Positions 1,378 through 42,400 of a DNA stretch of 64,000 bases are shown here, piece by piece. The position numbers and the translations under genes were made by a program. Origin of the DNA: Styela clava (taxonomy: Eukaryota); NCBI RefSeq assembly GCF_964204865.1, contig NC_135252.1:17608001-17672000 (forward strand), given 5' to 3'. Under the pieces are notes generated by a model. That model was not told where the DNA came from and ran no database searches. It saw nothing but the letters and a program-made list of their open reading frames with translations. Position 1 is the first letter of the stretch; the number at the start of each line of letters is the position of its first letter.

Positions 1378-1414
1378 TATAAAATGCGCTTGCTTCAAAC
1401 TTTCTATACAGTCG
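1378..1414 (+). promoter_or_regulatory. TATA box and initiator-like site of precursor gene A1 (conserved upstream of all intact A and B copies)
   Basis: TATAAAA at 1378-1384 and an acagtc Inr-like motif about 30 nt downstream, ~60 nt before the ATG. The block is nearly identical near 19047(+), 39344(+), 17239(-) and 37529(-). Confidence 0.55.
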
Positions 1415-1467
1415 AATTTTGTTTCAAATTCAGTCAACTTCCAACAGAGAAGAACAAGGAAGAAAAA

Positions 1468-4437
1468 ATGTCTGGAAAAATTGCAGTACTCGTTCTGGCC
1501 ATGATAATCTGCAGTTTTGGATTGACCAGGTTAGTTTTACCTCATCGCCGCGTTCTGTTTTCATTCAATCTGATACATTTCAATTTTTATATGAACTAAA
1601 CAATACAGGTTTATTCTAGCAATGTACTTTAAATTAGTTTTTGTTGAGAAACTTTTTTCTGGCCACATGAAAAAGTTGAAGATTTTATTTAGGAATAAAA
1701 TGCTAAGATAAACGAGAGTATTTATCCACTATCGAAATTATTTTTAAATTTCGTTAATTCCACTGTTTATTATTGATTCATGTTTGATCTTAATTCAAAT
1801 ACAACTTTGCGTATAAAAAAAGATGCATGTCTTTCTCAATGATTCCAAACGAGCTCAATTATAAATGTTCTAACAATTTCCGGATTGATAAGTTACAGAA
1901 AGCTATAATAAAGTCTACATTTCTTTTCACAGGGCAAAGTCTCTTGAATCTCGTAAGTTCATTTATCTTCTTTATTACGTGAGCATTTCTCAAACATTTG
2001 CCAACACATTTGGTAACTAATTCTGGAATTTGGTCGGTATGACATTTGAACCTGTATTTTCACTAAAACTTTTATTCGAATCGAAAAATTTTAAATGCAG
2101 ACGAACAATTCCAGAATGATATATGATATCTTTCTAAAATCCCAAATGCCGAAAAAAACTCAACAAACCTGTAAATCACATTATTGTATCTCAATCTCCA
2201 TCCGATTTAGTTGTTAGTAAATGCATCACAAATTTCCACTTTCCATTTTATATAATTCAGATTTTATCAACAACAACATACAACAAATAAATAAAATTGT
2301 TTTGAATTTGAAGCTATATCGGGTTTGATATTCTTTGTAATCATTGCAGGTGACCAATCTGAAAAATCCTCGAAAACCTTGGACAACAAAGATCAGAAAA
2401 AAATTTTCTGGTGGATTCCTATCGTGAAAGAAATTGTTCATGCAATAGAGAGAGGCAACGGAAATATTTTATTTTATATGATAAAAACCAAATTTAAAAT
2501 CAATTTCATTCATTTACGATATTTTGTTTGTTTGGGGGACGAGTTGGAAAACACACTAAATTTTTATATTTTATCCCATATGGTTCAGAATATTTCAAAA
2601 ATATCTGAAATTACGAGATTAACGTATTTCATTGAAGATATATAAAATTTAAAATTCTTCGTAATTATTGCAGGTGACCAATCTGAAGAAGTCTCAAAAA
2701 ACTTTGATAACAATGATCAGGAAAAAATTTTCTGGTGGGTTCCTATCGTGAAAGAAATTGTTCAAGCAGTAAAGAGAGGTAAGGAAAACATTTGTTTTAT
2801 TGATGAAAAACCAAATTTTAACTAAAATTGTTTGTTTAAATCAGGGATAAGTTCAGAACACTAAATTTTTATATTTTGTTCCATTTGGTTCCAAATTTTC
2901 AAAAGTTTGAAAAACGAGATGAAAATATTCAATTGAAGCTATATCAAATTATCTGTAATTATTGCAGGTGACCAATCTGAAGATGCTTCGAAAACATTTG
3001 ACAACAAAGATCAGGAAAAATTTGTGTGGTGGATTCCTTTAGTGGAAGAAATTGTTCAAGCAGTAAAGAGAGGTAAGGAAAACATTTGTTTTATTGACAA
3101 AAAAACCAAATTTTAACTAAAATTGTTTGTTTAAATCAGGGATAAGTTCAAAACACTAAATTTTTATATTTTGTTCCATTTGGTTCCAAATTTTCAAAAG
3201 TTTGAAAAAACGAGATGAAAATATTCAATTGAAGCTATATCAAATTATCTGTAATTATTGCAGGTGACCAATCTGAAGATGCTTCAAAAACATTTGACAA
3301 CAAAGATCAGGAAAAAATTTTCTGGTGGGTTCCTATCGTGAAAGAAATTGTTCAAGCAGTAAAGAGAGGTAAGGAAAACATTTGTTTTATTGATAAAAAA
3401 AACAAATTTTAACTAAAATTGTTTGTTTAAATCAGGGATAAGTTCAAAACACTAAATTTTTATATTCTGTTCCATTTGGTTCCAAATTTTCAAAAGTTTG
3501 AAAAAACGAGATGAAAATATTCAATTGAAGCTATATCAAATTATCTGTAATTATTGCAGGTGACCAATCTGAAGATGGTTCAAAAACATTTGACAACAAA
3601 GATCAGGAAAAAATTTTCTGGTGGGTTCCTATCGTGAAAGAAATTGTTCAAGCAGTAAAGAGAGGTAAGGAAAACATTTGTTTTATTGATAAAAAAAACA
3701 AATTTTAACTAAAATTGTTTGTTTAAATCAGGGATAAGTTCAAAACACCAAATTTTTATATTTTGTTCCATTTGGTTCCAAATTTTCAAAAGTTTGAAAA
3801 ACCGAGATGAAAATATTCAATTGAAGCTATATCAAATTATCTTTGATTATTGCAGGTGACCAATCTGAAGATGCTTCGAAAACATTTGACAACAAAGATC
3901 AGGAAAAATTTGTGTGGTGGATTCCTTTAGTAGAAGAAATTGTTCAAGCAGTAAAGAGAGGTAAAGAAAATATTTTCCCAAATGAAAGCAGAAGTTGAAA
4001 CAAAACAATATCATATTATTCATAAATTACATGAGTAACCTATCTGAACATTTTTTGATTCAATGTGAAGCACATGAATGACAAATGACTTTTGAAGTTG
4101 ATAAAATACTAAAATTAAATTGTTCATTTGAAAAGTTTGAAATTTCAAGTATATTTGTCTGGATGTAATTGTTACTGATTATACTTATCCTAAACTACAA
4201 ATACGGTATCCGAATTACTCAGTCTAAAGTAACTTGATTTTTGATACCGTGAAATTCAATTATAACAGTTGAAACTTAATCATAGTAAAGACAAACAAAG
4301 CGGTTGTTTCATTCTGTATTTGTCTCGTCTTTATTTCCTTACTAAATATTTAACATTTTTTGTACAATCGTCAATATAGATGATATTAAACGCAGATGTA
4401 TCATTTGATTTCATTAGTTTTCTCTTTTGCAGGTTAA
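1468..4437 (+). CDS. Secreted multi-peptide precursor A1 (clavanin-like host-defence polyprotein, 6 peptide modules, 238 aa if all exons are used)
   Basis: Exons: 1468-1529 (MSGKIAVLVLAMIICSFGLT, signal peptide), 1933-1952 (RAKSLES), 105-nt modules 2350-2454, 2674-2778, 2968-3072, 3264-3368, 3560-3664 and 3856-3960, and last coding exon 4433-4437 (Gly+TAA). All join in frame with ttgcag acceptors and gtaa(a/g)g donors, except module 1, which has a GC donor. Modules read DQSE...DQ(E/K)K-[IFWWVPIVKEIVQAVKR / FVWWIPLVEEIVQAVKR / IFWWIPIVKEIVHAIER]-G. Confidence 0.85.
2674..3960 (+). repeat. Coding tandem repeat, ~295-bp exon+intron unit (A1)
   Basis: Exon starts at 2674, 2968, 3264, 3560 and 3856 (period 294-296). 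Introns are near-identical apart from an A-run. Confidence 0.95.
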
Positions 4438-4545
4438 GTCTTATCCAGCAAATTTGAAAATACAGATGACGATTCGATGATGACCCGTGTCTACTTCCGA
4501 TTTTGATTTACATTTTCTCGTGTGAAATTTAACCTAATTATTCAG

Positions 4546-4551
4546 AATAAA
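4546..4551 (+). terminator. Candidate polyadenylation signal of A1
   Basis: AATAAA ~110 nt after the stop, conserved in the A and B paralogues. A second AATAAA lies near 4597. Confidence 0.45.
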
Positions 4552-5449
4552 TTACATCAAAGCATGGACGTTTGTAAAATTTTGGAACATACATGCAATA
4601 AACCGCTTACTATACGAACAAATCTATGAACGGTTTGTACAGGCTGAAGCAAATCGTATAACTTTATGATGCAACTGTATATGTTGCAACACTATATCAG
4701 TGATCGTTCTGCCAGTCATTAACGTATCTGGGTTTGCTTATTGTGCATTCGCAGCATCTGCTGCCTCAAAAATTTTCGCATCAATTATTGGTTGAATTTT
4801 GAAATCAAGGTGCAGGGAACATTAAGATAGTTTTGTAACGACGTAACTTACATTATTGACTTGCTTAGTTACCAATATTATCTATTCGCCTAGCAAGCGA
4901 CTCTATAGACGAGCGACTGATCAAATATTAGGAATCTACCATCTGTATTTAAAAAAAAAACGAGTATTTTTTCCTTGGAATATCCTGCATCATTCACTAA
5001 ACCTCGTGGAGCTGACATAGAAATAATAAATCGTTTTTGTTGCAATACTGGAAGTATATTTGCCAACAATGCATTTCGTACCGTTGCTCCGCCACGCAAA
5101 CACACTGAAACTATTTCTTTTCGTTTGCTATATACATTTGGATCGGTATTAGCTTACTACTCGTAGAAAACGATGTTTCAATTCCAGTCGTATTAAAAAT
5201 AGACAATTATGGACAATCGAATCCTGCTATGCACCAAGAAACATGAAATATCAACGATAATATCGGTCGGAAACCGAAGACTTATCGAAAAAAAGGAACT
5301 ATCTCCTAATATCTACTTATCTATCTGTTAATATTGTTCTGTTCATATCATAATAACTCATCATAAGCTGAATATGACGACTTCGTCATATTTTGTGCGA
5401 AATAAATATGATTTTACAGTCAATTGCAAAACTATCTCCATCGTGGCAG

Positions 5450-12570: not shown

Positions 12571-15290
12571 GATAAATTCAGAGCGGGCTTAGATCCTTAT
12601 AACACAGAACTTCCGGATATATATGTATAAAAATAATTGTGATTTTATCTAAATTTTATATATTAGTTGAGATTACTCAAATAGTTTCTTCCTAATGCAT
12701 AATCATACAAAAAATTATTTTCAAATAAAATAAGTTCGAACTTAATACTACCGCAGGTATTGGGGGCTTTCTGATTTAAATCCCGACCGTCCCGACCTAT
12801 TTTTTGATTGTTCCTATATCATATAAGTATAAGAAGACATAATATAGGACAGGAAAACAAACCACTGATCCGCGGTTTTTAAAATGCTCTGTTAAGTCAA
12901 GATTTAAAACAGGAAAAATCATTCATAATGCATTCACACAATATTTGATTTACTATTTCGGTATATTATTACGCATCAGCTACTGGCAATAGTTCTGTCA
13001 TCAAGTTTAAGTCATGAAAATACGAATGAGCTGTTGAAAACCCTTCTTGGTCCTACATATTCATGCGAATTCATGTTTTCACATTGAATTTACATTAAAT
13101 CCATCAACATTCTTCTTTTTGCTGATGAATATAAAATAGGTGACGTTTTCAGTAAAAAGGTTTGTCATTTCCGATATAAAATGAATAAAAATCGGTAATG
13201 ATCTTGTGCAATATTATTTTAATCATAACGTTTTTTATTGTGAAAATGGAGGGGGATGTTTAGTGAAGTTGTGCAGGAGCGAAATATCGATTTTTTTTAC
13301 TTCTTCCGACATAACTCAATATCTGAATTTAACGACAATGTTAGCTATTACTGATTTGTTCACAGATAGTCTCATTTTGATACATCGGATATATCAACAC
13401 ATTTCTTTAGAAACACCATGAGTTGTAAAAAATGTTGTAAGATATTGTTCAGGAATACTTTGCTGTTTCTGGGGGTTAGAATTTCATTTTGAAACGAAAT
13501 GGAACGATGTCAAACTTTTTAATTTGTACCCAATATTAGGGATGACGATCTGTCCTACTGCCAACGTTAGACATTTTATGTTCATCATTAAAAGGAAGAA
13601 TACTGGTGGATTTTTGAAAAATCATATTTAAAAACATGGATACCAATGAATATGAAAGGCTTTAACAATAACAACTCGGTAGTATTTCTGCATAAACCTA
13701 TATAATGCAAACGTATGCATTAATTGAAATATTATATCACAGTTTTCTTGGAAATTTAAAAACGCCATATTGAACTTTCATTTTCGTCAATATTTCTGAG
13801 TATAAATTTGACCGCAACCCAAGATAATTTCCGCCTTGATTCAACTGTAGCATCCTTCGGTGAATTGTAATCAATGGTAGTGCATATAATGCAAGGAGTC
13901 TGTAGCAGAAGTGAAGATAAATATCCTAGGATATTCAAGAGACTTGCTGCATACTGCAATTATATCTCAGAAACGTTTCTGACCTTGTGCAGCGGTTCTC
14001 TTGAATCACTTATATACATTTGATATATGGCGGAGTATTGGTAAATGCTGAAAACGGCGACAATGGGAAAACGAGTCGTCGTCATCAAGATGAATCTATC
14101 ATTATTGCAAACTGTGTGATATTCATTACTGAATTTCGAATCAACAGCCTAACTTTGGTTCCCCGCCGCTTCCCTTCATCAATCAAATTATGTTCTTTGC
14201 CTTTTGGCATAAATTTTGCATTTATATCTGTTTATTTGTATGACTGTTTGGGAAAAATAAACTTGACTATGACTACACAAATATATCAAGCCATATTAAG
14301 CAATAATTTTCATTGCCACACCAATTTTGCACCACGACTAATATTAAATATTCACACGAATATGAGAACGGAAAGCAATAAATTGTGCAACATCGACGAT
14401 TTTAGAATATTATTAATGATAATCTTTTAGGCATTGGGTACTATCCTTCTCCGATTTGATTGTTCGAAACTACGCATTCCGTCATTGATATTTTAAGTTT
14501 CTTGATGCATAGCAGGATTCGATTGACCATAATTGTCTATCTATATTACGTCTGGAATTGAAACATCGTTTTCTACGAGTAGTGAGCTAATATACGGATC
14601 AAAATGTATATAGCAAACGATAAGAAATAGTTTCAGTGTGTTTACGTGGCGAAGCAACGATGCGAAATGCACTGCTGGCAAATATCCTTCCAGTATTTCT
14701 ATGTCAGCTTCACGAGGTTTAGTGAATGATGCATGATATTTCAAAGAAAAAATACTCGTTTTTTTTAAAATACAGATAGTTGGTTCTTAATATTTGATCA
14801 GCTGCTCGTTTATAGAGTTGCTTGTTAGGCGGGTAAACAATATTGGTAACTAAGCAAGCTATTCGTGTAATGTTTTCGGATCATAAAATTTGCAGTTTTT
14901 CACAATGAACCCACCAATATAGGATGCGAAAATGTAGCAGATGTTGCAAATGCACAATGAGCCAAACCAAAAACGTTTAAGACTCGCAGATAGATCACTG
15001 ACATAGTGTTGAAATATATACAGCAACATCATAAAGTTTTATCATTTACTTCAGTCTGTATAAACAGTTCACAGAATTGTTCGTATAGTAAGCGGTTTAT
15101 TGTATGTTTATGTCCTAATATCTTTCTTGGAATCCATCGATCAAAATTTTACAAACGTACATGCTTTGATGTAATTTATTCAGAATAATTAGGTTAGATT
15201 TCACACGAGAAAATATGTAAATCAAAATCGGAAGTAGACACGGGTCATCATTGAATCGTCATCTGTATTTTCAAATTTGCTCGATAAGAC

Positions 15291-17149
15291 TTAACCTGCC
15301 GAAGAAAAACTAATGAAGTCAAATAATACTTATGCGCTAAATGATATTTTTAGAGAAGATTGTAACGAAGATACAAAATATTCCAATACAGAAATAAAGA
15401 CAACAAGGCGAGTGAAGAATTGCAGAATAAAACATCCGCTTTGTTTGTCTTTACTATATTTACGGTATTTTTGAAATTTACTCAATATTAAAATCAAAAA
15501 TATCAAATATTAAATTACTTTGAACTAGGTTATTTAGATAACGGTATTGATAATTTGGGATAAGTATAACCAGTAACAATTACATCCAGACAAATATAAT
15601 TAAAATTTCAAATCTTCCAATTGAACAATATCATTCTAGTATTTCATCAACTTTAAAAGTAATATATCAGTCATCAATAGATCAAAATAATTTTACTGTT
15701 AACATTTTATGAAAGTATGTATTTTGTTTTCTGTGAAATACATTAGATTGAACTATGATGATGAATTGATCAGTTTAACTGCTCTTACAATTGTACCAGC
15801 GATGTTTCTTAAAATATTTTTTTTCAGATAGGTTACTCATGTAACTTATGAATAATATAGAATATAGGTAATGCTTTGATTCAACTTCTGCTTTCATTTA
15901 TAAGACAACATATCCGCCTCACCTCTCTTTACTGCTCGAACAATTTCCTCCACTATAGGAATCCACCAGAATCTTTCCTGATCTTTGTCGTCAAATGTTT
16001 TTGACGCTTCATCAGATTGATCACCTGCAATAATTACAGAAAATTTTAAATTTTATATGGCTTCAATTCAATACTTTCATCTCGTATTTTCAAATTTCTG
16101 AAAATTTCGAATTATATAAAACAAAATATATCGGATTTTTAATAAAACGAATTATTGGCTTTACCTCTCTCTACTGCGTTAACAATTTTTGCCACTAAAG
16201 GAATCCACCAAAATCTTTCATGATCTTTGTTATCAACGGTTTTCGAGGATTTCCCAGATTGGTTACCTGCAATAATTACAAAGAATTTCAAATTTGATAT
16301 AGCTTCAAATTTAAAATAAGATTATTTATTTTTCATTTTCCTTTTTTTTTTTTTGATAAAATTTAAATCATATAAAATCAATACGTGAAAATTTGTGATG
16401 CATTTATCAACAACTGAATCGGATGGAGATTTAGATACAATAATGTGATTTACAGAGTTGTTGAGTTTTTTTCGACATTTGGGATTTTAAAAATATATCA
16501 TATATCATTCTGGAATTGTTCGTCAGCATTTAAAAATTTTCGATAAAGATTTAGTGAAAATACAGGTTCAAATGTTATACCGACCAAATTCCAGAAATAG
16601 TTACCAAATGAGTAGGCAAATGATTGAGAAATGCTCACGTAATAAATAAGATAAATTGAACTTACGAGATTCAAGAGACTTTGCCCTGTAAAAATAAATG
16701 CAGACTTTATTATAGCTTTCCGTAACTTATCAATCTGGAAATTGTTAGAACATTTTATAATTGAGCTCGTTTGGAATCATTGAAAAATACATGCATCCTT
16801 TTTTATACGCAAAGCTATATTTGAGTTAAGATTAAACATGGATCAATAATAAACAGTGGAATCGACGATATTGATAAATAATTTCGAAATTGGATAAATA
16901 CTCTCGTCTATCTTGGTATTTTATTCCTGAATGAAATCTTCAACTTTTTCATGTTGCCAGAAAAAAGTTCAAACAAAAATTAATTTAAAGTACATTGATA
17001 GAATTACGTTGTGTTGTTTAGTTCATATAAAAATTCAAATGTATCAGATGGAATGAAAATCAAACACGGCGATGAGGTAAAACTAACCTGGTTAATCCAA
17101 AACTGCAGATCATCATGGCTAAAACTAACATTGCAATTTTTCCAGACAT
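15291..17149 (-). CDS. Secreted peptide precursor B1 (2 modules, 96 aa)
   Basis: Exons 17149-17088 (MSGKIAMLVLAMMICSFGLT), 16685-16666, 16266-16165 (NQSGKSSKTVDNKDHER-FWWIPLVAKIVNAVER-G), 16024-15923 (DQSDEASKTFDDKDQER-FWWIPIVEEIVRAVKR-G) and 15295-15291 (Gly+TAA). All introns are GT-AG and in frame. Confidence 0.85.
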
Positions 17150-19136: not shown

Positions 19137-22100
19137 ATGTCTGGAAAAATTGCAGTACTCGTTCTGGCCATGATAATCTGCAGTTTTGGATTAACCAGGT
19201 TAGTTTTACCTCATCGCCGCGTTCTGTTTTCATTCAATCTGATACATTTCAATTTTTATATGAACTAAACAATACAGGTTTATTCTAGCAATGTACTTTA
19301 AATTAGTTTTTGTTGAGAAACTTTTTTCTGGCAACATGAAAAAGTTGAAGATTTTATTCAGGAATAAAATGCCAAGATAGACGGAGTATTTAGATAGATA
19401 GAGTATTTATCCACTATCGAAATTATTTTTAAATTTCGTTAATTCCATTGTTTATTATTGATTCATGTTTGATCCTAATTCAAATACAACTTTGCGTATA
19501 AAAATGATGCATGTCTTTCTCAATGATTCCAAACGAGCTCAATTATAAAATGTTCTAACAATTTCCGGATTGATAAGTTACGGAAAGCTTTAATATAGTC
19601 TACATTTATTTTTACAGGGCAAAGTCTCTTGAATCTCGTAAGTTCAATTCATCTAATTTATTACGTGAGCATTTCTCAAACATTTGCCAACTCATTTGGT
19701 AACTATTTCTGGAATTTGGTCGGTATGCCATTTGAACCTGTATTTTCACTAAAACTTTTATTCGAATCGAAAAATTTTAAATGCAGACGAACAATTCCAG
19801 AATGATATATGATATTTTTCTAAATCCCAAATGCCGAAAAAACTCAACAACCCTGTAAATCACATTATTGTATCTCAAACTCCATCCGATTCAGTTGTTA
19901 GTGCACCACAAATTTTCACGTTTTATTTTATATAATTCAGTTTTAATCAATTATTTTATTTTATAGGATAAAAACCGAATTTAAAAGCAATTTCATTCAT
20001 TTACGATATTTTGTTTGTTTGGGGGACGAGTTGGAAAACACACTAAATTTTTATATTTTATCCCATATGGTTCGGAATATTTCAAAAATATCTGAAAATA
20101 CGAGATGAAAGTATTTCATTGAAGATATATAAAATTTAAAATTCTTTGTAATTATTGCAGGTGACCAATCTGAAGAAGTCTCAAAAAACTTTGATAACAA
20201 TGATCAAGAAAAAATTTTCTGGTGGGTTCCTATCGTGAAAGAAATTGTTCAAGCAGTAAAGAGAGGTAAGGAAAACATTTGTTTTATTGATAAAAAACCA
20301 AATTTTATCTAAAATTGTTTGTTTAAATCAGGGATAAGTGCAAAACACTAAATTTTTATATTTTGTTCCATTTGGTTCCAAATTTTCAAAAGTTTGAAAA
20401 AACGAGATGAAAATATTCAATTGAAGCTATATCAAATTATCTGTAAATATTGCAGGTGACCAATCTGAAGATGCTTCAAAAACATTTGACAACAAAGATC
20501 AGGAAAAAATTTTCTGGTGGGTTCCTATCGTGAAAGAAATTGTTCAAGCAGTAAAGAGAGGTAAGGAAAACATTTGTTTTATTGATAAAAAAAACAAATT
20601 TTAACTAAAATTGTTTGTTTAAATCAGGGATAAGTTCAAAACACTAAATTTTTATATTTTGTTCCATTTGGTTCCAAATTTTCAAAAGTTTGAAAAAACG
20701 AGATGAAAATATTCAATTGAAGCTATATCAAATTATCTGTAATTATTGCAGGTGACCAATCTGAAGATGCTTCAAAAACATTTGACAACAAAGATCAGGA
20801 AAAAATTTTCTGGTGGGTTCCTATCGTGAAAGAAATTGTTCAAGCAGTACAGAGAGGTAAGGAAAACATTTGTTTTATTGATAAAAAACCAAATTTTATC
20901 TAAAATTGTTTGTTTAAATCAGGGATAAGTGCAAAACACTAAATTTTTATATTTTGTTCCATTTGGTTCCAAATTTTCAAAAGTTTGAAAAAACGAGATG
21001 AAAATATTCAATTGAAGCTATATCAAATTATCTGTAAATATTGCAGGTGACCAATCTGAAGATGCTTCAAAAACATTTGACAACAAAGATCAGGAAAAAA
21101 TTTTCTGGTGGGTTCCTATCGTGAAAGAAATTGTTCAAGCAGTAAAGAGAGGTAAGGAAAACATTTGTTTTATTGATAAAAAAAAACAAATTTTAACTAA
21201 AATTGTTTGTTTAAATCAGGGATAAGTTCAAAACACTAAATTTTTATATTTTGTTCCATTTGGTTCCAAATTTTCAAAAGTTTGAAAAAACGAGATGAAA
21301 ATATTCAATTGAAGCTATATCAAATTATCTGTAATTATTGCAGGTGACCAATCTGAAGATGCTTCAAAAACATTTGACAACAAAGATCAGGAAAAAATTT
21401 TCTGGTGGGTTCCTATCGTGAAAGAAATTGTTCAAGCAGTAAAGAGAGGTAAGGAAAACATTTGTTTTATTGATAAAAAAAAACAAATTTTAACTAAAAT
21501 TGTTTGTTTAAATCAGGGATAAGTTCAAAACACTAAATTTTTATATTTTGTTCCATTTGGTTCCAAATTCTCAAAAGTTTGAAAAACCGAGATGAAAATA
21601 TTCAATTGAAGCTATATCAAATTATCTGTTAAAATTGCAGGTGACCAATCTGAAGATGCTTCAAAAACATTTGACAACAAAGATCAGGAAAAATTCGTTT
21701 GGTGGATTCCTTTAGTGGAAGAAATTGTTCAAGCAGTAAAGAGAGGTAAGGAAAACATTTGTTTTGTTGATAAAAAAACAAATTTTAACTAAAATTGTTT
21801 GTTTAAATCAGGGATAAGTTCAAAACACTAAATTTTTATATTTTGTTCCATTTGGTTCCAAATTTTCAAAAGTTTGAAAAACCGAGATGAAAATATTCAA
21901 TTGAAGCTATATCAAATTATCTGTTATTATTGCAGGTGACCAATCTGAAGATGCTTCAAAAACATTTGACAACAAAGATCAGGAAAAATTCGTTTGGTGG
22001 ATTCCTTTAGTGGAAGAAATTGTTCAAGCAGTAAAGAGAGGTAAGGAAAACATTTGTTTTGTTGATAAAAAAACAAATTTCAACTAAAATTGTTTGTTTA

Positions 22101-22817
22101 AATCAGGGATAAGTTCAAAACACTAAATTTTTATATTTTGTTCCATTTGGTTCCAAATTTTCAAAAGTTTGAAAAACCGAGATGAAAATATTCAATTGAA
22201 GCTATATCAAATTATCTGTTATTATTGCAGGTGACCAATCTGAAGATGCTTCGAAAACATTTGACAACAAAGATCAGGAAAAATTCGTGTGGTGGATTCC
22301 TTTAGTAGAAGAAATTGTTCAAGCAGTAAAGAGAGGTAAAGAAAATATTTTCCCAAATGAAAGCAGAAGTTGAAACAAAACAATATCATATTATTCATAA
22401 ATTACATGAGTAACCTATCTGAACATTTTTTGCTTCAATGTGAAGCACATGAATGACAAATGACTTTTGAAGTTGATAAAATACTAAAATTAAATTGTTC
22501 ATTTGAAAAGTTTGAAATTTCAAGTATATTTGTCTGGATGTAATTGTTACTGATTATACTTATCCTAAACTACAAATACGGTATCCGAATTACTCAGTCT
22601 AAAGTAACTTGATTTTTGATACCGTGAAATTCAATTATAACAGTTGAAACTTAATCATAGTAAAGACAAACAAAGCGGTTGTTTCATTCTGTATTTGTCT
22701 CGTCTTTATTTCCTTTATATACTAAATATTTAATATTTTTTGTACAATCGTCAATATAGATGATATTAAACGCAGATGTATCATTTGATTTCAATAGTTT
22801 TCTCATTTGCAGGTTAA
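19137..22817 (+). CDS. Secreted multi-peptide precursor A2 (8 modules, 308 aa)
   Basis: Exons 19137-19198 and 19618-19637, 105-nt modules starting at 20161, 20456, 20752, 21047, 21344, 21641, 21936 and 22231, and last exon 22813-22817. All introns are GT-AG. The HAIER module is deleted and one module ends AVQR-G. Confidence 0.87.
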
Positions 22818-23252
22818 GTCTTATCCAGCAAATTTGAAAATACAGATGACGATTCGATGATGACCCGTGTCTACTTCCGATTTTGATTTACATATTTTCT
22901 CGTGTGAAATTTAACCTAATTATTCAGAATAAATTACATCAAAGCATGGACGTTTGTAACATTTTGGAACATACAACATATATATATATATATACAATAA
23001 ACCGCTTACTATACGAACAAATCTATGAACGGTTTGTACAGGCTGAAGCAAATCGAATAACTTTATGATGTAACTGTATATGTTGCAACACTATATCGGT
23101 GATCGTTCTGCCAGTCATTAACGTATCTGGGTTTGCTTATTGTGCATTCGCAGCATCTGCTGCCTCAAAAATTTTCGCATCAATTATTGTTTGAATTTTG
23201 AAATCAAGGTGCAGGGGACAGTAAAATAGTTTTGTAACGACGTAACTTACAT

Positions 23253-31910: not shown

Positions 31911-34900
31911 GTACTCTTTTTTTTTTAAATACAGATAGTTGGTTCTTAATATTTGATCAGCTGCTCGTTTATAGAGTTGCTTGCTAGGCGGATAAATAAT
32001 ATTGGTAACTAAGCAAGCTATTAGTGTAATTTTTTCGGATCATAAAATTTGCAGTTTTTCACAATGAACCCACCAATATATGATGCGAAAATGTAGCAGA
32101 TGTTGCAAATGCACAATGAGCCAAACCAAAAACGTTTGAGGCTCGCAGATAGATCACTGACATAGTGTTGAAATATATACAGCAACATCATAAAGTTTTA
32201 TCATTTACTTCAGTCTGTACAAAACAGTTCACAGAATTGTTCGTATAGTAAGCGGTTTATTTTATGTTTATGTCCTAATATCTTTCTTGGAATCCATCGA
32301 CCAAAATTTTACAAACGTCCATGCTTTGATGTAATTTATTCTGAATAATTAGGTTAGATTTCACACGAAAAAATATGTAAATCAAAATCGGAAGTAGACA
32401 CGGGTCATCATTGAATCGTCATCTGTATTTTCAAATTTGCTCGATAAGACTTAACCTGCCGAAGAAAAACTAATGAAGTCAAATAATACTTATGCGCTGA
32501 ATAATATTTTTTGAGAAGATTGTAACAAAGATACAAAATATTCCAATACAGAAATAAAGACAACAAGGCGAGTGAAGAATTGCAGAATAAAACATCCGCT
32601 TTGTTTGTCTTTACTATATTTACGGTATTTTTGAAATTTACTCAATATTAAAATCAAAAATATCAAATATTAAATTACTTTGAACTAGGTTATTTAGATT
32701 ACGGTATTGATAATTTGGGATAAGTATAATCAGTAACAATTACATCCAGGCAAATATAATTAAAATTTCAAATCTTCCGATTGAACAATATCATTCTAGT
32801 ATTTCATCAACTTTAAAAGTAATATATCAGTCATCAATAGATCAAAATAATTTTAATGTTAACATTTTACTAAAGTATGTACTTTGTTTTCTGTGAAATA
32901 TATTAGATTTAATTATGATGATGAATTGATCAGTTTAACTGCTCTTACAATTGTACCAGCAACGTTTTTTAACACAGTGTCGGTTCTGTCCTTATCATTT
33001 AATCCAATATTTTTTTTTCAGATAGGTTACTCATGTAACTTATGAATAATATACAATATAGGTAATGCTTTGATTCAACTTCTGCTTTCATTTATTAGAC
33101 AACATATCCGCCTAACCTCTCTTTACTGCTCGAACAATTTCCTCCACTATAGGAATCCACCAGAATCTTTCCTGATCTTTGTTGTCAAATGTTTTTGACG
33201 CTTCATCAGATTGATCACCTGCAATAATTACAGAAAATTTTAAATTTTATATGGCTTCAATTCAATACTTTCATCTCGTATTTTCAAATTTCTGAAAATT
33301 TCGAATTATATAAAACAAAATATATCGGATTACACGGATATAACGGATTATTGTCTTTACCTCTCTCTACTGCGTTAACAATTTTTACCACTAAAGGAAT
33401 CCACCAAAATCTTTCATGATCTTTGTTATCAACGGTTTTCGAGGATTTCCCAGATTGGTTACCTGCAATAATTACAAAGAATTTCAAATTTGATATAGCT
33501 TCAAATTTAAAATAGGATTATTTATTTTTCATTTTCGTTTTTTTTTTTTGATAAAATTTAAATCATATAAAATCAATACGTGAAAATTTGTGATGCATTT
33601 ATCAACAACTGAATCGGATGGAGATTTAGATACAATAATGTGATTTACAGAGTTGTTGAGTTTTTTTCGACATTTGGGATTTTAAAAATATATCATATAT
33701 CATTCTGGAATTGTTCGTCAGCATTTAAAAATTTTCGATAAAGATTTAGTGAAAATACAGGTTCAAATGTTATACCGACCAAATTCCAGAAATAGTTACC
33801 AAATGTGTTGGCAAATGATTGAGAAATGCTCACGTAATAATTAGATAAATTGAACTTACGAGATTCAAGAGACTTTGCCCTGTAAAATTAAATGTAGACT
33901 ATATTATAGCTTTCCGTAACTTATCAATCCGGAAATTGTTAGAACATTTTATAATTGAGCTCGTTTGGAATCATTGAAAAATACATGCATCTTTTTTTAT
34001 ACGCAAAGTTATATTTGGGTTAAGATCAAACATGGATCAATATTAAACAGTGGAATTATTGACGATATTGATAAATAATTTCGAAATTGGATAAATACTC
34101 TCGTCTATCTTGGTATTTTATTCCTGAATGAAATCTTCAACTTTTTCATGTTGCCAGAAAAAAGTTCTCAACAAAAATTAATTTAAAGTACATTGATAGA
34201 ATTACGTTGTGTTGTTTAGTTCATATGAAAATTGAAATGTATCAGATTGAATGAATCAGAACAGAACGCGGCGATGAGGTAAAACTAACCTGGTTAATCC
34301 AGGTTAAACATGAAAGATGACAAGGCAGCAGCAAGTGCCAACAAAACATGAAACGGTGGAAAGAAGGACTGGTTGCTCATTAACAGCCTAACCTAAAACA
34401 ATAACTTCGCTGTAAACATATAACAACTGAACTACCTTCATAACGATCTATAACCTGCCCTAGTTAATTATTTAATTGTCAACCATAGGCACTAAATCTG
34501 CCTATATTTAATAAATATAACAACCTATATTTGTAGTAATATACTAGAACGAATAGCTAAATAAACGCCATATACACCAGAATACTGGCTCTCTTATATT
34601 TTTGGTGAAGGTTTCTTCGTTTATCTCTTATTTATAATTTATTCTTTTTATGTTTTTTTTTTAACTTCTTTGTCTTTCCGTAAACTGACTCTCTACTCTT
34701 TTTCTGTTATACCTCCTAAATTTCTTTTCTATTAGAGGAGACGGACATCACGTGACAGGGAGAGTTGATATGAGTGTGCACCAAGGTGTATTTCTCCCAA
34801 CTCTCTTCTGTCACGGAAGTGTTCGTCGAATCTACCCTCTGTTTTCTCCTGGTGTTATTATTTTGCCTTCTTATAGGTATTTACAGGTAACAACATCTAC

Positions 34901-35000: not shown

Positions 35001-37389
35001 CTCTTTTTTTTTTTAAATACAGATAGTTGGTTCTTAATATTTGATCAGCTGCTCGTTTATAGAGTTGCTTGCTAGGCGGATAAATAATATTGGTAACTAA
35101 GCAAGCTATTAGTGTAATTTTTTCGGATCATAAAATTTGCAGTTTTTCACAATGAACCCACCAATATATGATGCGAAAATGTAGCAGATGTTGCAAATGC
35201 ACAATGAGCCAAACCAAAAACGTTTGAGGCTCGCAGATAGATCACTGACATAGTGTTGAAATATATACAGCAACATCATAAAGTTTTATCATTTACTTCA
35301 GTCTGTACAAAACAGTTCACAGAATTGTTCGTATAGTAAGCGGTTTATTTTATGTTTATGTCCTAATATCTTTCTTGGAATCCATCGACCAAAATTTTAC
35401 AAACGTCCATGCTTTGATGTAATTTATTCTGAATAATTAGGTTAGATTTCACACGAGAAAATATGTAAATCAAAATCGGAAGTAGACACGGGTCATCATT
35501 GAATCGTCATCTGTATTTTCAAATTTGCTCGATAAGACTTAACCTGCCGAAGAAAAACTAATGAAGTCAAATAATACTTATGCGCTGAATAATATTTTTT
35601 GAGAAGATTGTAACAAAGATACAAAATATTCCAATACAGAAATAAAGACAACAAGGCGAGTGAAGAATTGCAGAATAAAACATCCGCTTTGTTTGTCTTT
35701 ACTATATTTACGGTATTTTTGAAATTTACTCAATATTAAAATCAAAAATATCAAATATTAAATTACTTTGAACTAGGTTATTTAGATTACGGTATTGATA
35801 ATTTGGGATAAGTATAATCAGTAACAATTACATCCAGGCAAATATAATTAAAATTTCAAATCTTCCGATTGAACAATATCATTCTAGTATTTCATCAACT
35901 TTAAAAGTAATATATCAGTCATCAATAGATCAAAATAATTTTAATGTTAACATTTTACTAAAGTATGTACTTTGTTTTCTGTGAAATATATTAGATTTAA
36001 TTATGATGATGAATTGATCAGTTTAACTGCTCTTACAATTGTACCAGCAACGTTTTTTAACACAGTGTCGGTTCTGTCCTTATCATTTAATCCAATATTT
36101 TTTTTTCAGATAGGTTACTCATGTAACTTATGAATAATATACAATATAGGTAATGCTTTGATTCAACTTCTGCTTTCATTTATTAGACAACATATCCGCC
36201 TAACCTCTCTTTACTGCTCGAACAATTTCCTCCACTATAGGAATCCACCAGAATCTTTCCTGATCTTTGTTGTCAAATGTTTTTGACGCTTCATCAGATT
36301 GATCACCTGCAATAATTACAGAAAATTTTAAATTTTATATGGCTTCAATTCAATACTTTCATCTCGTATTTTCAAATTTCTGAAAATTTCGAATTATATA
36401 AAACAAAATATATCGGATTACACGGATATAACGGATTATTGTCTTTACCTCTCTCTACTGCGTTAACAATTTTTACCACTAAAGGAATCCACCAAAATCT
36501 TTCATGATCTTTGTTATCAACGGTTTTCGAGGATTTCCCAGATTGGTTACCTGCAATAATTACAAAGAATTTCAAATTTGATATAGCTTCAAATTTAAAA
36601 TAGGATTATTTATTTTTCATTTTCGTTTTTTTTTTTTGATAAAATTTAAATCATATAAAATCAATACGTGAAAATTTGTGATGCATTTATCAACAACTGA
36701 ATCGAATGGAGATTTAGATACAATAATGTGATTTACAGAGTTGTTGAGTTTTTTTCGACATTTGGGATTTTAAAAATATATCATATATCATTCTGGAATT
36801 GTTCGTCAGCATTTAAAAATTTTCGATAAAGATTTAGTGAAAATACAGGTTCAAATGTTATACCGACCAAATTCCAGAAATAGTTACCAAATGTGTTGGC
36901 AAATGATTGAGAAATGCTCACGTAATAATTAGATAAATTGAACTTACGAGATTCAAGAGACTTTGCCCTGTAAAATTAAATGTAGACTATATTATAGCTT
37001 TCCGTAACTTATCAATCCGGAAATTGTTAGAACATTTTATAATTGAGCTCGTTTGGAATCATTGAAAAATACATGCATCTTTTTTTATACGCAAAGTTAT
37101 ATTTGAGTTAAGATCAAACATGGATCAATATTAAACAGTGGAATTATTGACGATATTGATAAATAATTTCGAAATTGGATAAATACTCTCGTCTATCTTG
37201 GTATTTTATTCCTGAATGAAATCTTCAACTTTTTCATGTTGCCAGAAAAAAGTTCTCAACAAAAATTAATTTAAAGTACATTGATAGAATTACGTTGTGT
37301 TGTTTAGTTCATATGAAAATTGAAATGTATCAGATTGAATGAATCAGAACAGAACGCGGCGATGAGGTAAAACTAACCTGGTTAATCCA
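31229..37389 (+). repeat. Near-perfect ~3.08-kb tandem duplication
   Basis: 31229-34301 is repeated at 34307-37389 (offset 3078-3088). The copies differ mainly in poly(A)/poly(T) length. Confidence 0.92.
32451..34301 (-). pseudogene. 5'-truncated peptide precursor B2 (exons 2-5 intact, no promoter or ATG)
   Basis: Exons 33879-33860, 33462-33361, 33218-33117 and 32455-32451 match B3. Only the last ~12 nt of exon 1 remain (34290-34301) at the duplication junction. Confidence 0.8.
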
Positions 37390-37439
37390 AAACTGCAGAT
37401 CATCATGGCCAAAACAAATACTGCAATTTTTCCAGACAT
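35539..37439 (-). CDS. Secreted peptide precursor B3 (2 modules, 96 aa)
   Basis: Exons 37439-37378 (MSGKIAVFVLAMMICSFGLT), 36967-36948, 36550-36449 (FWWIPLVVKIVNAVER-G), 36306-36205 (FWWIPIVEEIVRAVKR-G) and 35543-35539. Confidence 0.85.
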
Positions 37440-39433: not shown

Positions 39434-42400
39434 ATGTCTGGAAAAATTGCAGTACTCGTTCTGGCCATGATAATCTGCAATTTTGGATTAACCAGGTTAG
39501 TTTTACCTCATCGCCGCGTTCTGTTTTCATTCAATCTGATATATTTCAATTTTTATATGAACTAAACAATACAGGTTTATTCTAGCAATGTACTTTAAAT
39601 TAGTTTTTGTTGAGAAACTTTTTTCTGGCAACATGAAAAAGTTGAAGATTTTATTCAGAAATAAAATGCTAAGATAAACGAGAGTATTTATCCACTATCG
39701 AAATTATTTTTAAATTTCGTTAATTCCATTGTTTATTATTGATTCATGTTTGATCCTAATTCAAATACAACTTTGCGTATAAAAAAAGATGCATGTCTTT
39801 CTCAATGATTCCAAACGAGCTCAATTATAAAATGTTCTAACAATTTCCAGATTGATAAGTTACGGAAAGCTATAATATAGTCTACATTTATTTTCACAGG
39901 GCAAAGTCTCTTGAGTCTCGTAAGTTCAATTTATCTTCTTTATTACGTGAGCATTTCTCAAACATTCGCCAACACATTTGGTAACTATTTCTGGAATTTG
40001 GTCGGTTTGCCATTTGAACCTGTATTTTCACTAAAACTTTTATTCGAATCGAAAAATTTAAAATGCTGACGAACAATTCCAGAATGATATATGATATATT
40101 TTTAAAATCCCAAATGACGAAAAAAACTCAGCAACCCTGTAAATCACATTATTGTATCTCAATCTCCATCCCATTCAGTTGTTAGTAAATGCATCACAAA
40201 TTTTCACGTTTTATTTTATATAATTCAGATTTTATCGACAACAACAAAATAAACGAGAACGAAAAAAAATAAAATTGTTTGAATTTGAAGCTATATCGGG
40301 TTTGAAATTCTTTGTAATTATTGCAGGTGACCAATCTGAAAAATCCTCGAAAACCTTGGACAACAAAGATCAGAAAAAAATTTTCTGGTGGATTCCTATC
40401 GTGAAAAAAATTGTTCATGCAATAGAGAGAGGCAAAGGAAATATTTTATTTTATAGGATAAAAACCGAATTTAAAAGCAATTTCATTCATTTACGATATT
40501 TTGTTTGTTCGGGGGACGAGTTGGAAAACACACTGAATTTTTATATTTTATCCCATTTGGTTCGGAATATTTCAAAAATATCTGAAATTACGAGATGAAA
40601 GTATTTCATTGAAGATATATAAAATTTAAAATTCTTTGTAATTATTGCAGGTGACCAATCTGAAGAAGTCTCAAAAAACTTTGATAACAATGATCAGGAA
40701 AAATTTTTCTGGTGGGTTCCTATCGTGAAAGAAATTGTTCAAGCAGTAAAGAGAGGTAAGGAAAACATTTGTTTTATTGATGAAAAACAAAATTTTAACT
40801 AAAATTGTTTGTTTAAATCAGGGATAAGTTCAGAACACTAAATTTTTATATTTTGTTCCATTTGGTTCCAAATTTTCAAAAGTTTGAAAAACGAGATGAA
40901 AATATTCAATTGAAGCTATATCAAATTATCTGTAATTATTGCAGGTGACCAATCTGAAGATGCTTCGGAAACATTTGACAACAAAGATCAGGAAAAATTT
41001 GTGTGGTGGATTCCTTTAGTGGAAGAAATTGTTCAAGCAGTAAAGAGAGGTAAGGAAAACATTTGTTTTATTGATAAAAAAACCAAATTTTAACTAAAAT
41101 TGTTTGTTTAAATCAGGGATAAGTTCAAAACACTACATTTTTATATTTTGTTCCATTTGGTTCCAAATTTTCAAAAGTTTGAAAAAACGAGATGAAAATA
41201 TTCAATTGAAGCTATATCAAATTATCTGTAATTATTGCAGGTGACCAATCTGAAGATGCTTCAAAAACATTTGACAACAAAGATCAGGAAAAAATTTTCT
41301 GGTGGGTTCCTATCGTGAAAGAAATTGTTCAAGCAGTAAAGAGAGGTAAGGAAAACATTTGTTTTATTGATAAAAAAAACAAATTTTAACTAAAATTGTT
41401 TGTTTAAATCAGGGATAAGTTCAAAACACTAAATTTTTATATTTTGTTCCATTTGGTTCCAAATTTTCAAAAGTTTGAAAAAACGAGATGAAAATATTCA
41501 ATTGAAGCTATATCAAATTATCTGTAATTATTGCAGGTGACCAATCTGAAGATGCTTCAAAAACATTTGACAACAAAGATCAGGAAAAAATTTTCTGGTG
41601 GGTTCCTATCGTGAAAGAAATTGTTCAAGCAGTAAAGAGAGGTGAGGAAAACATTTGTTTTATTGATAAAAAAAACAAATTTTAACTAAAATTGTTTGTT
41701 TAAATCAGGGATAAGTTCAAAACACTAAATTTTTATATTTTGTTCCATTTGGTTCCAAATTTTCAAAAGTTTGAAAAACCGAGATGAAAATATTCAATTG
41801 AAGCTATATCAAATTATCTGTTATTATTGCAGGTGACCAATCTGAAGATGCTTCAAAAACATTTGACAACAAAGATCAGGAAAAATTCGTTTGGTGGATT
41901 CCTTTAGTGGAAGAAATTGTTCAAGCAGTAAAGAGAGGTAAGGAAAACATTTGTTTTGTTGATAAAAAAACAAATTTCAACTAAAATTGTTTGTTTAAAT
42001 CAGGGATAAGTTCAAAACACTAAATTTTTATATTTTGTTCCATTTGGTTCCAAATTTTCAAAAGTTTGAAAAACCGAGATGAAAATATTCAATTGAAGCT
42101 ATATCAAATTATCTGTTATTATTGCAGGTGACCAATCTGAAGATGCTTCGAAAACATTTGACAACAAAGATCAGGAAAAATTCGTGTGGTGGATTCCTTT
42201 AGTAGAAGAAATTGTTCAAGCAGTAAAGAGAGGTAAAGAAAATATTTTCCCAAATGAAAGCAGAAGTTGAAACAAAACAATATCATATTATTCATAAATT
42301 ACATGAGTAACCTATCTGAACATTTTTTGATTCAATGTGAAGCACATGAATGACAAATGACTTTTGAAGTTGATAAAATACTAAAATTAAATTGTTCATT

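What the first reader, a model, noticed from the sequence alone, without database searches (positions are those of the whole stretch)
4433..4437. Last exon codes only Gly+stop: a dedicated amidation exon that any module can splice to
Seen: in all six loci the last coding exon supplies GT-TAA, completing the Gly begun by the final G of the preceding module. Every module also starts with GT, so the Gly is always formed across a splice junction. Knowledge: a C-terminal Gly is the substrate of peptidylglycine alpha-amidating monooxygenase. Inference: mature peptides end ...VKR-NH2 or ...ER-NH2, and KR is part of the peptide rather than a convertase site. The ER-G and QR-G variants support this. 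Because all modules are phase 1-1, any subset can be skipped, so the array could act as a combinatorial cassette as well as a polyprotein.
Basis: partly seen in the sequence, partly recalled or inferred. Interest (0 to 1): 0.75.

Follow-up and report, generated by a model that had tools for sequence, protein, structure and literature searches.

The report
Sea-squirt peptide genes ending in Gly-stop exon
Six very highly expressed sea-squirt genes, relatives of the known clavanin antimicrobial-peptide genes, string together two to eight one-peptide exons and end in an exon that codes only the rest of a glycine plus a stop, which probably lets the last peptide be amidated.

Summary
All six loci in the window, plus a seventh just upstream, have the acceptor GCAG followed by GTTAA. 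All 30 module exons examined start with GT and end with G. RNA contigs from four runs show modules spliced onto position 4433.

The genome is Styela clava: one locus encodes clavanin C exactly. The window genes share the clavanin gene front end: a signal exon ending in phase 2, a 20-nt microexon coding AKSLEx, and a phase-1 junction making Arg. Clavanin genes read EEK | 23-mer | G | DDQQ.... The modules here read DQEK | 16-17-mer | G | DQSE.... Published clavanins are amidated, and a PAM-like exon lies on the same contig. Amidation to ...R-NH2 is therefore well motivated but was not shown.

The terminal exon is an old, shared 3' exon of the wider family, not a special invention. A distant paralog has GT-TAG, matching a RefSeq protein that ends ...KGLG. 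Other paralogs read on, but an upstream exon already carries their stop.

Cassette splicing could not be tested, because the contigs are about 100 nt long and the modules are nearly identical. RefSeq isoforms of paralogs that differ in module content are only a hint.

Verdict: real, and a new variant of a known kind.

The parts
1378..1384 (+). TATAAAA box-like motif of locus P1, about 25 nt upstream of where the RNA contig starts
   Evidence: Read. The X4 contig covers 1408-1530 (table 8). Promoter function is inferred.
1468..1529 (+). P1 exon 1 coding part: the signal peptide MSGKIAVLVLAMIICSFGLT plus 2 nt (ends in phase 2)
   Evidence: RNA contig 1408-1530.
1933..1952 (+). P1 exon 2, a 20-nt microexon coding (R)AKSLES plus 1 nt. 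It has the same length and phases as the clavanin gene microexon.
   Evidence: Joint 1952>2350 with GT..AG ends in 4 of 4 runs. Clavanin comparison.
2350..2454 (+). P1 module 1: spacer DQSEKSSKTLDNKDQKK plus peptide IFWWIPIVKEIVHAIER. It is followed by a GC-AG intron.
   Evidence: The joint 2452>2672 (ambiguity 3, so 2454>2674, GC..AG) appears in X1, X2 and X3.
2674..3960 (+). P1 modules 2-6 (2674-2778, 2968-3072, 3264-3368, 3560-3664, 3856-3960). Three code IFWWVPIVKEIVQAVKR and two code FVWWIPLVEEIVQAVKR, each after a 17-residue acidic spacer ending DQEK.
   Evidence: Joints 2778>2968 and 3072>3264, and exon-only depth.
4433..4437 (+). The finding itself: GT completes the Gly codon begun by the last G of a module, and TAA stops translation.
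   Evidence: Module-to-4433 joints at depth 2017-3934.
4433..4570 (+). P1 last exon, almost entirely 3' UTR, with AATAAA at 4546-4551
   Evidence: Depth in bins 4378-4605, and contigs ending at about 4560.
19137..22933 (+). Locus P2: exon 1 from 19137, exon 2 at 19618-19637, 8 modules (20161 to 22335), GTTAA at 22813-22817. It has lost the module-1 type by deletion.
39434..42825 (+). Locus P3: exon 1 from 39434, 7 modules (40327 to 42232), GTTAA at 42705-42709
35423..37439 (-). Locus M1: exon 1 ATG at 37439, exon 2 at 36967-36948, two 102-nt modules (36550, 36306), GTTAA at 35543-35539. The last donor is GTTAGG.
32335..33879 (-). Locus M2: no exon 1, exon 2 at 33879-33860, modules at 33462 and 33218, GTTAA at 32455-32451
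15175..17149 (-). Locus M3: exon 1 ATG at 17149, exon 2 at 16685-16666, modules at 16266 and 16024, GTTAA at 15295-15291

Best explanation
The window holds three head-to-head gene pairs of a Styela clava family related to the clavanin antimicrobial-peptide genes.

Each gene has four kinds of exon:
- a signal-peptide exon;
- a 20-nt microexon;
- 2 to 8 tandem exons of 102 or 105 nt in phase 1-1, each coding a 17-residue acidic spacer and a 16-17-residue amphipathic Trp-Trp peptide;
- a last exon that supplies only GT plus TAA before the 3' UTR.

Shown here: the exon structure, its use in very abundant RNA, and the shared gene architecture with clavanin genes.

Inferred from the clavanin precedent: the polyprotein is cut after E-K or E-R at each peptide's N-terminus and between Gly and Asp/Asn at its C-terminus. 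Peptidylglycine alpha-amidating monooxygenase then turns ...R-Gly into ...R-NH2. The last copy needs no C-terminal cut, because the terminal exon ends the protein right after its Gly.

The Gly-stop exon is the family's common 3' exon. Because every junction is phase 1, any module can be last without a frame change. This tolerates gain and loss of modules by unequal crossing-over, and possibly exon skipping.
For: Structure and expression: plus the joints and the exon/intron depth contrast.

Species:
- L020 encodes the 23-mer printed as clavanin C in PMC8719109.
- RefSeq S. clava proteins P0010 and P0011 match own-genome loci piece by piece: 20/20, 37/38, 17/18 and 32/35, and 50/51 and 22/22.

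Clavanin link (compared):
- Clavanin exon 1 ends in phase 2.
- Its 20-nt exon 2 codes (N)AKSLEE, against (R)AKSLES here.
- A phase-1 junction makes Arg in both.
- The clavanin peptide exon reads KSEEEK|23-mer|G|DDQQDNGK...*.

Clavanins are described as amidated 23-mers, from a precursor with a 24-residue mature part and a 27-residue posterior peptide (PMC8719109, passages).

Gly followed by D/N is kept in all sub-families, whatever precedes it.

A distant paralog's terminal exon is ttag|GTTAGC, the only such acceptor downstream of its last module. The matching RefSeq isoform ends ...KGLG.

The exon at C3:15298471-15298614 has PAM/PHM as its best solved-structure matches, E 5.7e-11.

Peptide properties:
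- With the terminal dipeptide the peptides are amphipathic: helical hydrophobic moment 0.46-0.60, side-chain charge 0 to +2.
- Without it the charge is -2 to +2. It is 0 or negative in 22 of 30 modules; it stays +1 or +2 in the 6 ER-ending modules of the M-type loci (the three M loci and L003) and in the P3 first module.
Against: - No peptide chemistry was available, so amidation and both cut sites are inferences.
- 21 of 30 modules have K-R before the Gly. This is a classical convertase site, and cutting there followed by trimming would give ...QAV free acids.
- 7 of 30 modules end E-R, which matches the E-R motif proposed for the N-terminal cut.
- G|GT is also the splice-consensus-friendly way to fill a phase-1 junction, so part of the Gly conservation may be structural.
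- Protein searches started from S. clava paralogs returned no clavanin precursor. DNA BLAST of window exons against the clavanin loci gave only chance-level hits. The clavanin link therefore rests on gene architecture and a 13/20-nt microexon match that I counted by eye.
- In three paralogs the homologous last exon is not Gly-stop.
Confidence: 0.62

Rival explanations
1. Convertase model. K-R (and the monobasic R) before the Gly is the real C-terminal cut site. Carboxypeptidase trimming then gives non-amidated ...QAV-type peptides. The Gly is merely the first residue of the next spacer, and at the end of the protein it is a harmless leftover.
For: K-R precedes the Gly in 21 of 30 modules and Arg is invariant in 30 of 30. 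The E-R ending of 7 modules equals the E-R motif at the presumed N-terminal site. The canonical amidation order, Gly before the basic pair, is not met here. It is met in the unrelated metagenome proteins P0003, P0006 and P0008, which read ...ALG-R.
Against: - Paralog modules have no basic residue before the Gly yet keep Gly-Asp/Asn.
- Clavanin genes of this genome read ...HVF-G-DDQQ, and clavanins are reported as amidated.
- Removing the last two residues makes 22 of 30 peptides neutral or anionic.
- Q-R and E-R are poor dibasic sites (general knowledge).
Confidence: 0.25
2. Neutral-relic model. The GT-TAA start of the last exon is under no selection for Gly. GT is kept by the acceptor consensus, and the stop is a drift outcome in an exon that is essentially 3' UTR.
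For: Homologous last exons of paralogs start GTTCG., GTTGGC, or GTTAGC with a lost acceptor (CAT). Those genes stop in an upstream truncated-spacer exon, reading GDKSEEASQSFDDNDH*, GDQSEEAFH* or ...LEKGTF*. The six window copies are one recent event.
Against: Gly-stop is found in two sub-families, with different stop codons and only about 70-77% identity in the 3' exon. In M1 and M2 a donor change gives GGT-TAG, so the same product results with or without splicing. Every module in every sub-family ends with Gly.
Confidence: 0.12
3. Cassette model, the second half of the reader's idea. Regulated skipping of modules yields transcripts with different numbers and mixes of the K-type and E-type peptides.
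For: - All modules are phase 1-1, with near-identical splice sites.
- RefSeq isoforms X2, X4 and X5 of a paralogous S. clava gene differ in which modules they hold.
- Isoforms X2 and X4 of another gene hold 2 and 1 modules, while its locus here has at least 5.
Against: - No joint shows a skip that can be assigned. The module side of the junction contigs is 23-25 nt and is identical in modules 2-6.
- RefSeq isoforms are computed models, and tandem repeats invite mis-joined reads or collapsed assemblies.
- The only odd joints are non-canonical (2691>4455) or out of frame (1978>2674, depth 41-105 against 1569-4306 for the main joint).
Confidence: 0.2

Closest known systems
Clavanins and clavaspirin of Styela clava (haemocyte alpha-helical antimicrobial peptides, C-terminally amidated)
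   Same: - Same genome.
- Same front end: a signal exon ending in phase 2, a 20-nt microexon coding AKSLEx, and a phase-1 junction forming Arg.
- An acidic propiece ending E-K.
- A peptide followed by Gly and then an Asp-led acidic stretch.
(PMC8719109, passages)
   Different: - Clavanin genes carry one His-rich 23-mer and a 27-residue tail in a single last exon. Here there are 2-8 Trp-Trp 16-17-mers, one per exon, and the tail is reduced to nothing.
- No significant sequence similarity was recovered by the searches run.
[quoted passage not shown]
   Same: One peptide copy per small exon. The copies are nearly identical, which suggests unequal crossing-over or gene conversion. Alternative splicing has been discussed as a source of variation in copy number (PMC3731216, passages).
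   Different: Unrelated lineage and sequence, so this is an analogy only. No Gly-stop terminal exon is described in the passages I read.
Canonical amidated prohormones and neuropeptide precursors (X-Gly-Lys/Arg-Arg)
   Same: A polyprotein with repeated peptides, a Gly as amide donor and basic residues at the boundaries (general knowledge).
   Different: The order is reversed here (K-R-Gly-Asp). Exposing the Gly of internal copies therefore needs a cut after Gly, not after the basic pair.
Uncharacterised S. clava RefSeq genes LOC120342297, LOC120342639 and LOC120336745
   Same: Same family: the signal peptide, AKSLE, spacers of the DQSEE..D.D.EK type, and modules ending in Gly. One isoform ends ...KGLG.
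   Different: Different peptide cores (FPLQWIVPIVKAIKGL, TWFLWVM, FGWRLLF). The window's own module was at best 68% identical to any library representative.

Membership tests
Clavanin-type precursor genes (S. clava) | Signal-peptide exon ending in phase 2, then a 20-nt microexon coding AKSLEx, then a phase-1 junction forming Arg | tested here: met
   Window: 62 coding nt, then the 20-nt GGCAAAGTCTCTTGAATCTC, then C|GT (joint 1952>2350). Clavanin loci L019 and L020: 47 coding nt, then the 20-nt TGCAAAATCTCTGGAGGAAA, then A|GA.
Clavanin-type precursor genes (S. clava) | Acidic propiece ending E-K directly before the mature peptide | tested here: met
   Clavanin reads KSEEEK. The window has DQEK in 19 modules, DQER in 5, DHER in 4 and DQKK in 2, of 30. 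The cut itself is inferred.
Clavanin-type precursor genes (S. clava) | Mature peptide followed by Gly and then an Asp-led acidic extension | tested here: met
   Clavanin reads ...HVF-G-DDQQDNGK. The window reads ...R-G-DQSE or ...R-G-NQSG at internal junctions, and G-stop at the end.
Clavanin-type precursor genes (S. clava) | Detectable sequence similarity of the precursor | tested here: not met
   No clavanin precursor appeared among the hits. These searches are word-based and length-limited, so the test is weak. BLASTN of window exons against L019 and L020 gave only chance-level hits.
Clavanin-type precursor genes (S. clava) | One His-rich 23-residue peptide per precursor | tested here: not met
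   There are 2-8 copies of 16-17-residue Trp-Trp peptides with 0-1 His.
Clavanin-type precursor genes (S. clava) | C-terminal amide shown chemically | not testable with these tools
   This needs mass spectrometry. Only the enzyme side was checked, through the PAM-like exon.
Tandem peptide-exon defence genes (Xenopus magainin/caerulein type) | Several near-identical peptide-coding exons in tandem within one gene | tested here: met
   There are 6, 8 and 7 modules with a period of about 295 nt in P1, P2 and P3. The description of the frog genes comes from PMC3731216.
Tandem peptide-exon defence genes (Xenopus magainin/caerulein type) | Transcripts with different numbers of the repeated exon | tested here: inconclusive
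   Contigs are too short to assign junctions to modules. RefSeq isoforms of paralogs differ in module content.
Canonical amidated prohormone | Gly immediately before the basic cleavage pair (X-G-K/R-R) | tested here: not met
   The order is K/E/Q-R-G in 30 of 30 modules.

The most novel reading that the evidence does not exclude
A clavanin-derived gene family has turned its single peptide exon into a phase 1-1 cassette, with the amide-donor Gly codon split across every junction and a universal Gly-stop end exon. Any module, in any number and order, then yields a correctly terminated and amidated product. The animal would use exon skipping or rapid copy-number change to tune the ratio of cationic (K-type) to neutral (E-type) Trp-Trp peptides. 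Internal copies would be released by a still unknown endoprotease that cuts Gly|Asp.
Probability: 0.2. Interest if true: 0.65.

Novelty: new variant of a known kind. Interest (0 to 1): 0.5.

Why it matters
Clavanins are among the best-studied marine antimicrobial peptides, but their gene family has been treated as a handful of single-peptide precursors.

This locus, with its paralogs on three contigs, shows that the same gene scaffold has been expanded into multi-copy, exon-per-peptide polyproteins. These carry quite different Trp-rich cores. In four RNA runs they are expressed at depths of 10^4 to 10^5 per exon bin.

It gives concrete, testable predictions:
- defined 16-17-residue peptide sequences ending in Arg-amide;
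- a Gly|Asp processing activity shared with clavanins;
- a gene design in which copy number can change without breaking the reading frame or the C-terminal modification.

Tried and rejected
- Vestigial-module idea. I tested whether the last exon is a decayed module head. A MAFFT alignment looked suggestive. Smith-Waterman scores against 1000 shuffles were not significant: z was at most 1.6, and 87-659 of 1000 shuffles reached the observed score for the six targets. I dropped the idea. The paralog alignment shows instead that the last exon is a separate, conserved 3' exon.
- Arthropod or spider origin. I first suspected this from the E-R processing motif and the AT-rich DNA. I rejected it once the only close hit was a Styela clava protein and clavanin C was found encoded in the genome.
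- Clavanin precursors by protein search. They were not recovered with P0005 or P0012 as queries.
- Clavaspirin. It was not found in the assembly, although a 23-residue control query works down to 59% identity. I record this as 'not found with this query'.
- Cu-monooxygenase hits on contigs C13 and C10. These are DBH-like, not PAM. The PAM-like exon is on C3.
- Literature. No held paper prints six 7-residue motifs of these peptides. Searches for S. clava peptidomics or new peptide families returned reviews only (listings seen only). Two older papers could not be opened. Supplementary files were not requested.
- Protein libraries. I cannot say the window's proteins are absent. The representative library collapses relatives above 50% identity, and the other searches were limited by length.
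- Joined spliced model. All searches used single exons or public proteins.
Full report
**What is at the coordinates**

Window 4433-4437 reads GTTAA, directly after a strong acceptor (tttctcttttgcag). About 110 nt of further sequence and an AATAAA at 4546-4551 follow.

The same GCAG|GTTAAGTC, UTR and poly(A) signal occur at six places in the window. They lie at 4433, 22813 and 42705 on the + strand, and at 35543, 32455 and 15295 on the - strand. A seventh copy lies about 2.5 kb upstream of the window.

**Gene anatomy**

Each + strand locus has these parts:
- a TATA-like box;
- an exon with ATG and a 20-residue hydrophobic signal sequence plus 2 nt;
- a 20-nt microexon;
- a run of 105-nt exons: 6 in P1, 8 in P2 and 7 in P3;
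- the last exon.

The - strand loci (M1, M2, M3) have two 102-nt modules each. M2 lacks exon 1. P and M genes sit head to head about 1.9 kb apart, and the pair is repeated with a period of about 20 kb.

Tally over 30 modules, 27 in the window plus 3 in the upstream gene L003:
- 30 of 30 start GT and 30 of 30 end G.
- Each codes a 17-residue acidic spacer ending DQEK (19), DQER (5), DHER (4) or DQKK (2).
- Each then codes a 16-17-residue peptide such as IFWWVPIVKEIVQAVKR, FVWWIPLVEEIVQAVKR or FWWIPIVEEIVRAVKR.
- The peptide ends KR in 21 modules, ER in 7 and QR in 2.

The Gly codon is thus split G|GT at every module-module junction and at the module-to-last-exon junction. The first junction (microexon to module 1) is C|GT, which is Arg.

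**RNA evidence**

One search for sequencing runs found four RNA-like runs of one study holding 26-28% of the sampled words. By my own estimate that is about the exon share of the stretch. It also found four runs of the same organism label that hold none of the words. Expression is therefore condition- or tissue-specific.

Laying X1-X4 on 1300-4700 gave the following:
- Exon bins reach 10^3 to 1.5x10^5, and intron bins reach 0-64.
- Joint 1952>2350 (GT..AG) appears in 4 of 4 runs.
- The module-1 donor is GC, and the GC-AG intron is used (2454>2674; listed in X1, X2 and X3).
- Module-to-module joints 2778>2968 and 3072>3264 are present.
- Module-to-4433 joints are listed in X1, X2 and X4 at depth 2017-3934, and appear as loose ends in X3.
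- One loose end at 4431 (X1, X2) carries the last module of the upstream seventh gene (...VEEIVRAVQR), so that gene also uses its Gly-stop exon.

The contigs are about 100 nt long. The 23-25 nt on the module side of the junction are identical in modules 2-6. The data therefore cannot say which module is joined to the last exon.

Results that do not fit the simple picture:
- A non-canonical joint, 2691>4455, appears in X2 only (depth 1319).
- A 255-nt loose end sits at 3955 in X3.
- A minor out-of-frame alternative donor, 1978>2674, has depth 41-105.

**Whose genome, and what family**

A profile-free HMMER search of 1.84 billion representatives with one module gave four hits. Only one was from a tunicate: a Styela clava 'uncharacterized protein' at 68% identity.

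Further S. clava RefSeq proteins of three genes belong to the same family. Two of them match loci of this genome almost exactly, exon piece by exon piece.

The clavanin A sequence printed in PMC8719109 finds two loci here. One of them encodes the printed clavanin C 23-mer exactly. The genome is therefore S. clava.

Genome-wide, the window's peptide type is confined to this cluster. Related genes with other cores lie on C2 at 12.02-12.05 Mb and on C3 at 2.79 and 10.63 Mb. Their cores are FPLQWIVPIVKAIKGL, FWGLFVPLVKKAIEEI, TWFLWVM-GDKDT, LWPASFVWGSL-GDKDT and FGWRLLF. In all of them the module ends in Gly, followed by D, N or E and then Q/E-S-E.

I checked this myself on the clavanin loci.

**The clavanin comparison**

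In L019 and L020 the clavanin gene has the following parts:
- an exon 1 with 15 codons plus 2 nt;
- a 20-nt exon 2 coding (N)AKSLEE plus 1 nt;
- a phase-1 acceptor that makes Arg;
- a last exon reading KSEEEK | 23-mer | G | DDQQDNGKFYGHYAEDNGKHWYDTGDQ stop.

The window genes have the same layout: 20 codons plus 2 nt, a 20-nt exon coding (R)AKSLES plus 1 nt, then Arg, then spacer-EK | peptide | G | DQSE.... The two microexons agree at 13 of 20 nt by my own count.

PMC8719109 (passages read) describes clavanins as C-terminally amidated 23-mers. It describes their precursor as signal 19, propeptide 10, mature 24 and posterior peptide 27. This fits Gly as the 24th residue.

So this animal has known peptides that are cut after E-K, cut after an internal Gly that precedes Asp, and then amidated. 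The modules present the same two boundaries.

An exon on the same contig (C3:15298471-15298614) has peptidylglycine alpha-amidating monooxygenase as its best solved-structure matches, at E 5.7e-11. The many other Cu-monooxygenase hits are DBH-like.

**What the last exon is**

The 3' exon is shared by the whole family. Its first codons differ between paralogs:
- GT-TAA in the window cluster.
- GT-TAG in the + gene of L008. There it is the only Gly-stop acceptor downstream of the last module, and it explains the RefSeq isoform ending ...KGLG.
- GTTAGC behind a lost acceptor in L006.
- Open reading (GT-TCG..., GT-TGG...) in L005, L007 and the other L008 gene.

The non-Gly-stop genes for which I read it (L006, L007 and the other L008 gene) carry an extra, truncated spacer exon with its own stop upstream. 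The L008 + gene, whose last exon is GT-TAG, also has such an exon; the RefSeq isoform ending ...KGLG must skip it.

So the exon is not a device invented for amidation. It is the common end piece, and the Gly-stop state occurs in at least two diverged branches.

The idea that it is a decayed module head was tested and was not significant.

**Mechanism and its weak points**

Most likely (about 0.6), each module yields a Trp-Trp amphipathic peptide ending in Arg-amide. The last copy gets its Gly directly from the terminal exon.

With the terminal dipeptide, the peptides have helical hydrophobic moments of 0.46-0.60 and side-chain charge of 0 to +2. Without it, 22 of 30 are neutral or anionic.

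The main rival (about 0.25) is ordinary convertase cleavage after K-R or R, with trimming. K-R in 21 of 30 modules and the invariant Arg keep this alive. So does the identity of the E-R ending with the N-terminal motif. Only mass spectrometry can decide.

G|GT is also what splice consensus favours at a phase-1 junction. That weakens any argument from Gly conservation alone. However, the clavanin Gly is not at a junction, and the paralogs with an in-exon G-DKDT point to a processing role.

**Cassette idea**

Phase 1-1 symmetry is real. RefSeq lists isoforms of paralogs that differ in module content. These are computed models on repeats, and my RNA data cannot resolve the question. I put regulated combinatorial use at about 0.2.

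The same symmetry also simply makes the array tolerant of unequal crossing-over. P1, P2 and P3 have 6, 8 and 7 modules, and P2 has lost the module-1 type.

**Comparison and novelty**

The nearest known genes are the clavanin genes (shared scaffold, different core, single copy). By analogy, the next nearest are the Xenopus laevis magainin and caerulein genes, which have tandem peptide-coding exons (PMC3731216, passages).

The canonical amidation order, Gly then basic pair, is not met here.

No held paper prints these peptides. RefSeq calls the paralogs uncharacterised.

I rate this a new variant of a known kind, with interest 0.5.

Noticed in passing
window 8-939: A foldback or MITE-like element lies between the upstream M gene and P1. 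Its inverted arms are 8-75/872-939 (90% complementary) and 76-156/787-867 (75%).
   Followed up: partly
window 2455-2673 and 40432-40650: The intron after module 1 of P1 and P3 starts GC (GCAACG, GCAAAG). RNA contigs show that the GC-AG intron is spliced in P1-type transcripts.
   Followed up: yes
window 36204-36199 and 33116-33111 (- strand): In M1 and M2 the donor after the last module is GTTAGG. If left unspliced, the frame reads GGT-TAG, giving the same Gly-stop product. M3 and the upstream gene have GTGAGG. Use of this donor in RNA was not tested.
   Followed up: no
window 32301-34301 (- strand): Locus M2 has exon 2, two modules and the last exon, but only a 42-nt remnant of the exon-1 region. 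It is either a partial duplicate or is transcribed from M1 upstream of it.
   Followed up: no
window 19640-20160: P2 has lost the module-1 type exon that P1 and P3 have. No 1952>2674-type joint was listed, so expression of P2 in runs X1-X4 is unproven.
   Followed up: partly
window 2691>4455, 3955 and 1978>2674: Three RNA features remain unexplained: a non-canonical contig joint in X2 (depth 1319), a 255-nt foreign continuation after 3955 in X3, and a minor out-of-frame alternative donor 26 nt into intron 2.
   Followed up: no
G000 C13:10.37-10.76 Mb, C5 and C10 (L001, L002, L009): There are 46 exon-level matches to the Cu2 monooxygenase domain, many of them clustered. The two I checked are closest to dopamine beta-hydroxylase, not PAM. 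This is a large DBH-like expansion in an animal known for heavily hydroxylated peptides.
   Followed up: partly
L006, L007, L008, L018 (C2:12.02-12.05 Mb; C3:2.79 and 10.63 Mb): At least six more genes of the family carry other peptide cores, with up to about 14 modules. Several have a truncated spacer exon with its own stop before the shared last exon. RefSeq isoforms of one of them hold 1-2 modules, where the locus here has at least 5.
   Followed up: partly
G000 C17:3137431-3137517: A solitary module-like match (69% identity over 29 residues) lies inside a 132-residue open frame, far from any cluster. I fetched it as L004 but did not analyse it.
   Followed up: no
library proteins P0003, P0006, P0008: Unnamed metagenome polyproteins carry repeated ...ESRRWWIPIAQGVLTALG-R... 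units. They share a WWIPI core with the window peptides but use the canonical Gly-Arg amidation order. This may be convergence.
   Followed up: no
G000 C1:10538332-10538400 and 10574722-10574790 (L020, L019): Two clavanin genes lie 36 kb apart: one codes clavanin C exactly and one codes a variant, LFKLLGR.... Clavaspirin was not found with a 23-residue query.
   Followed up: partly
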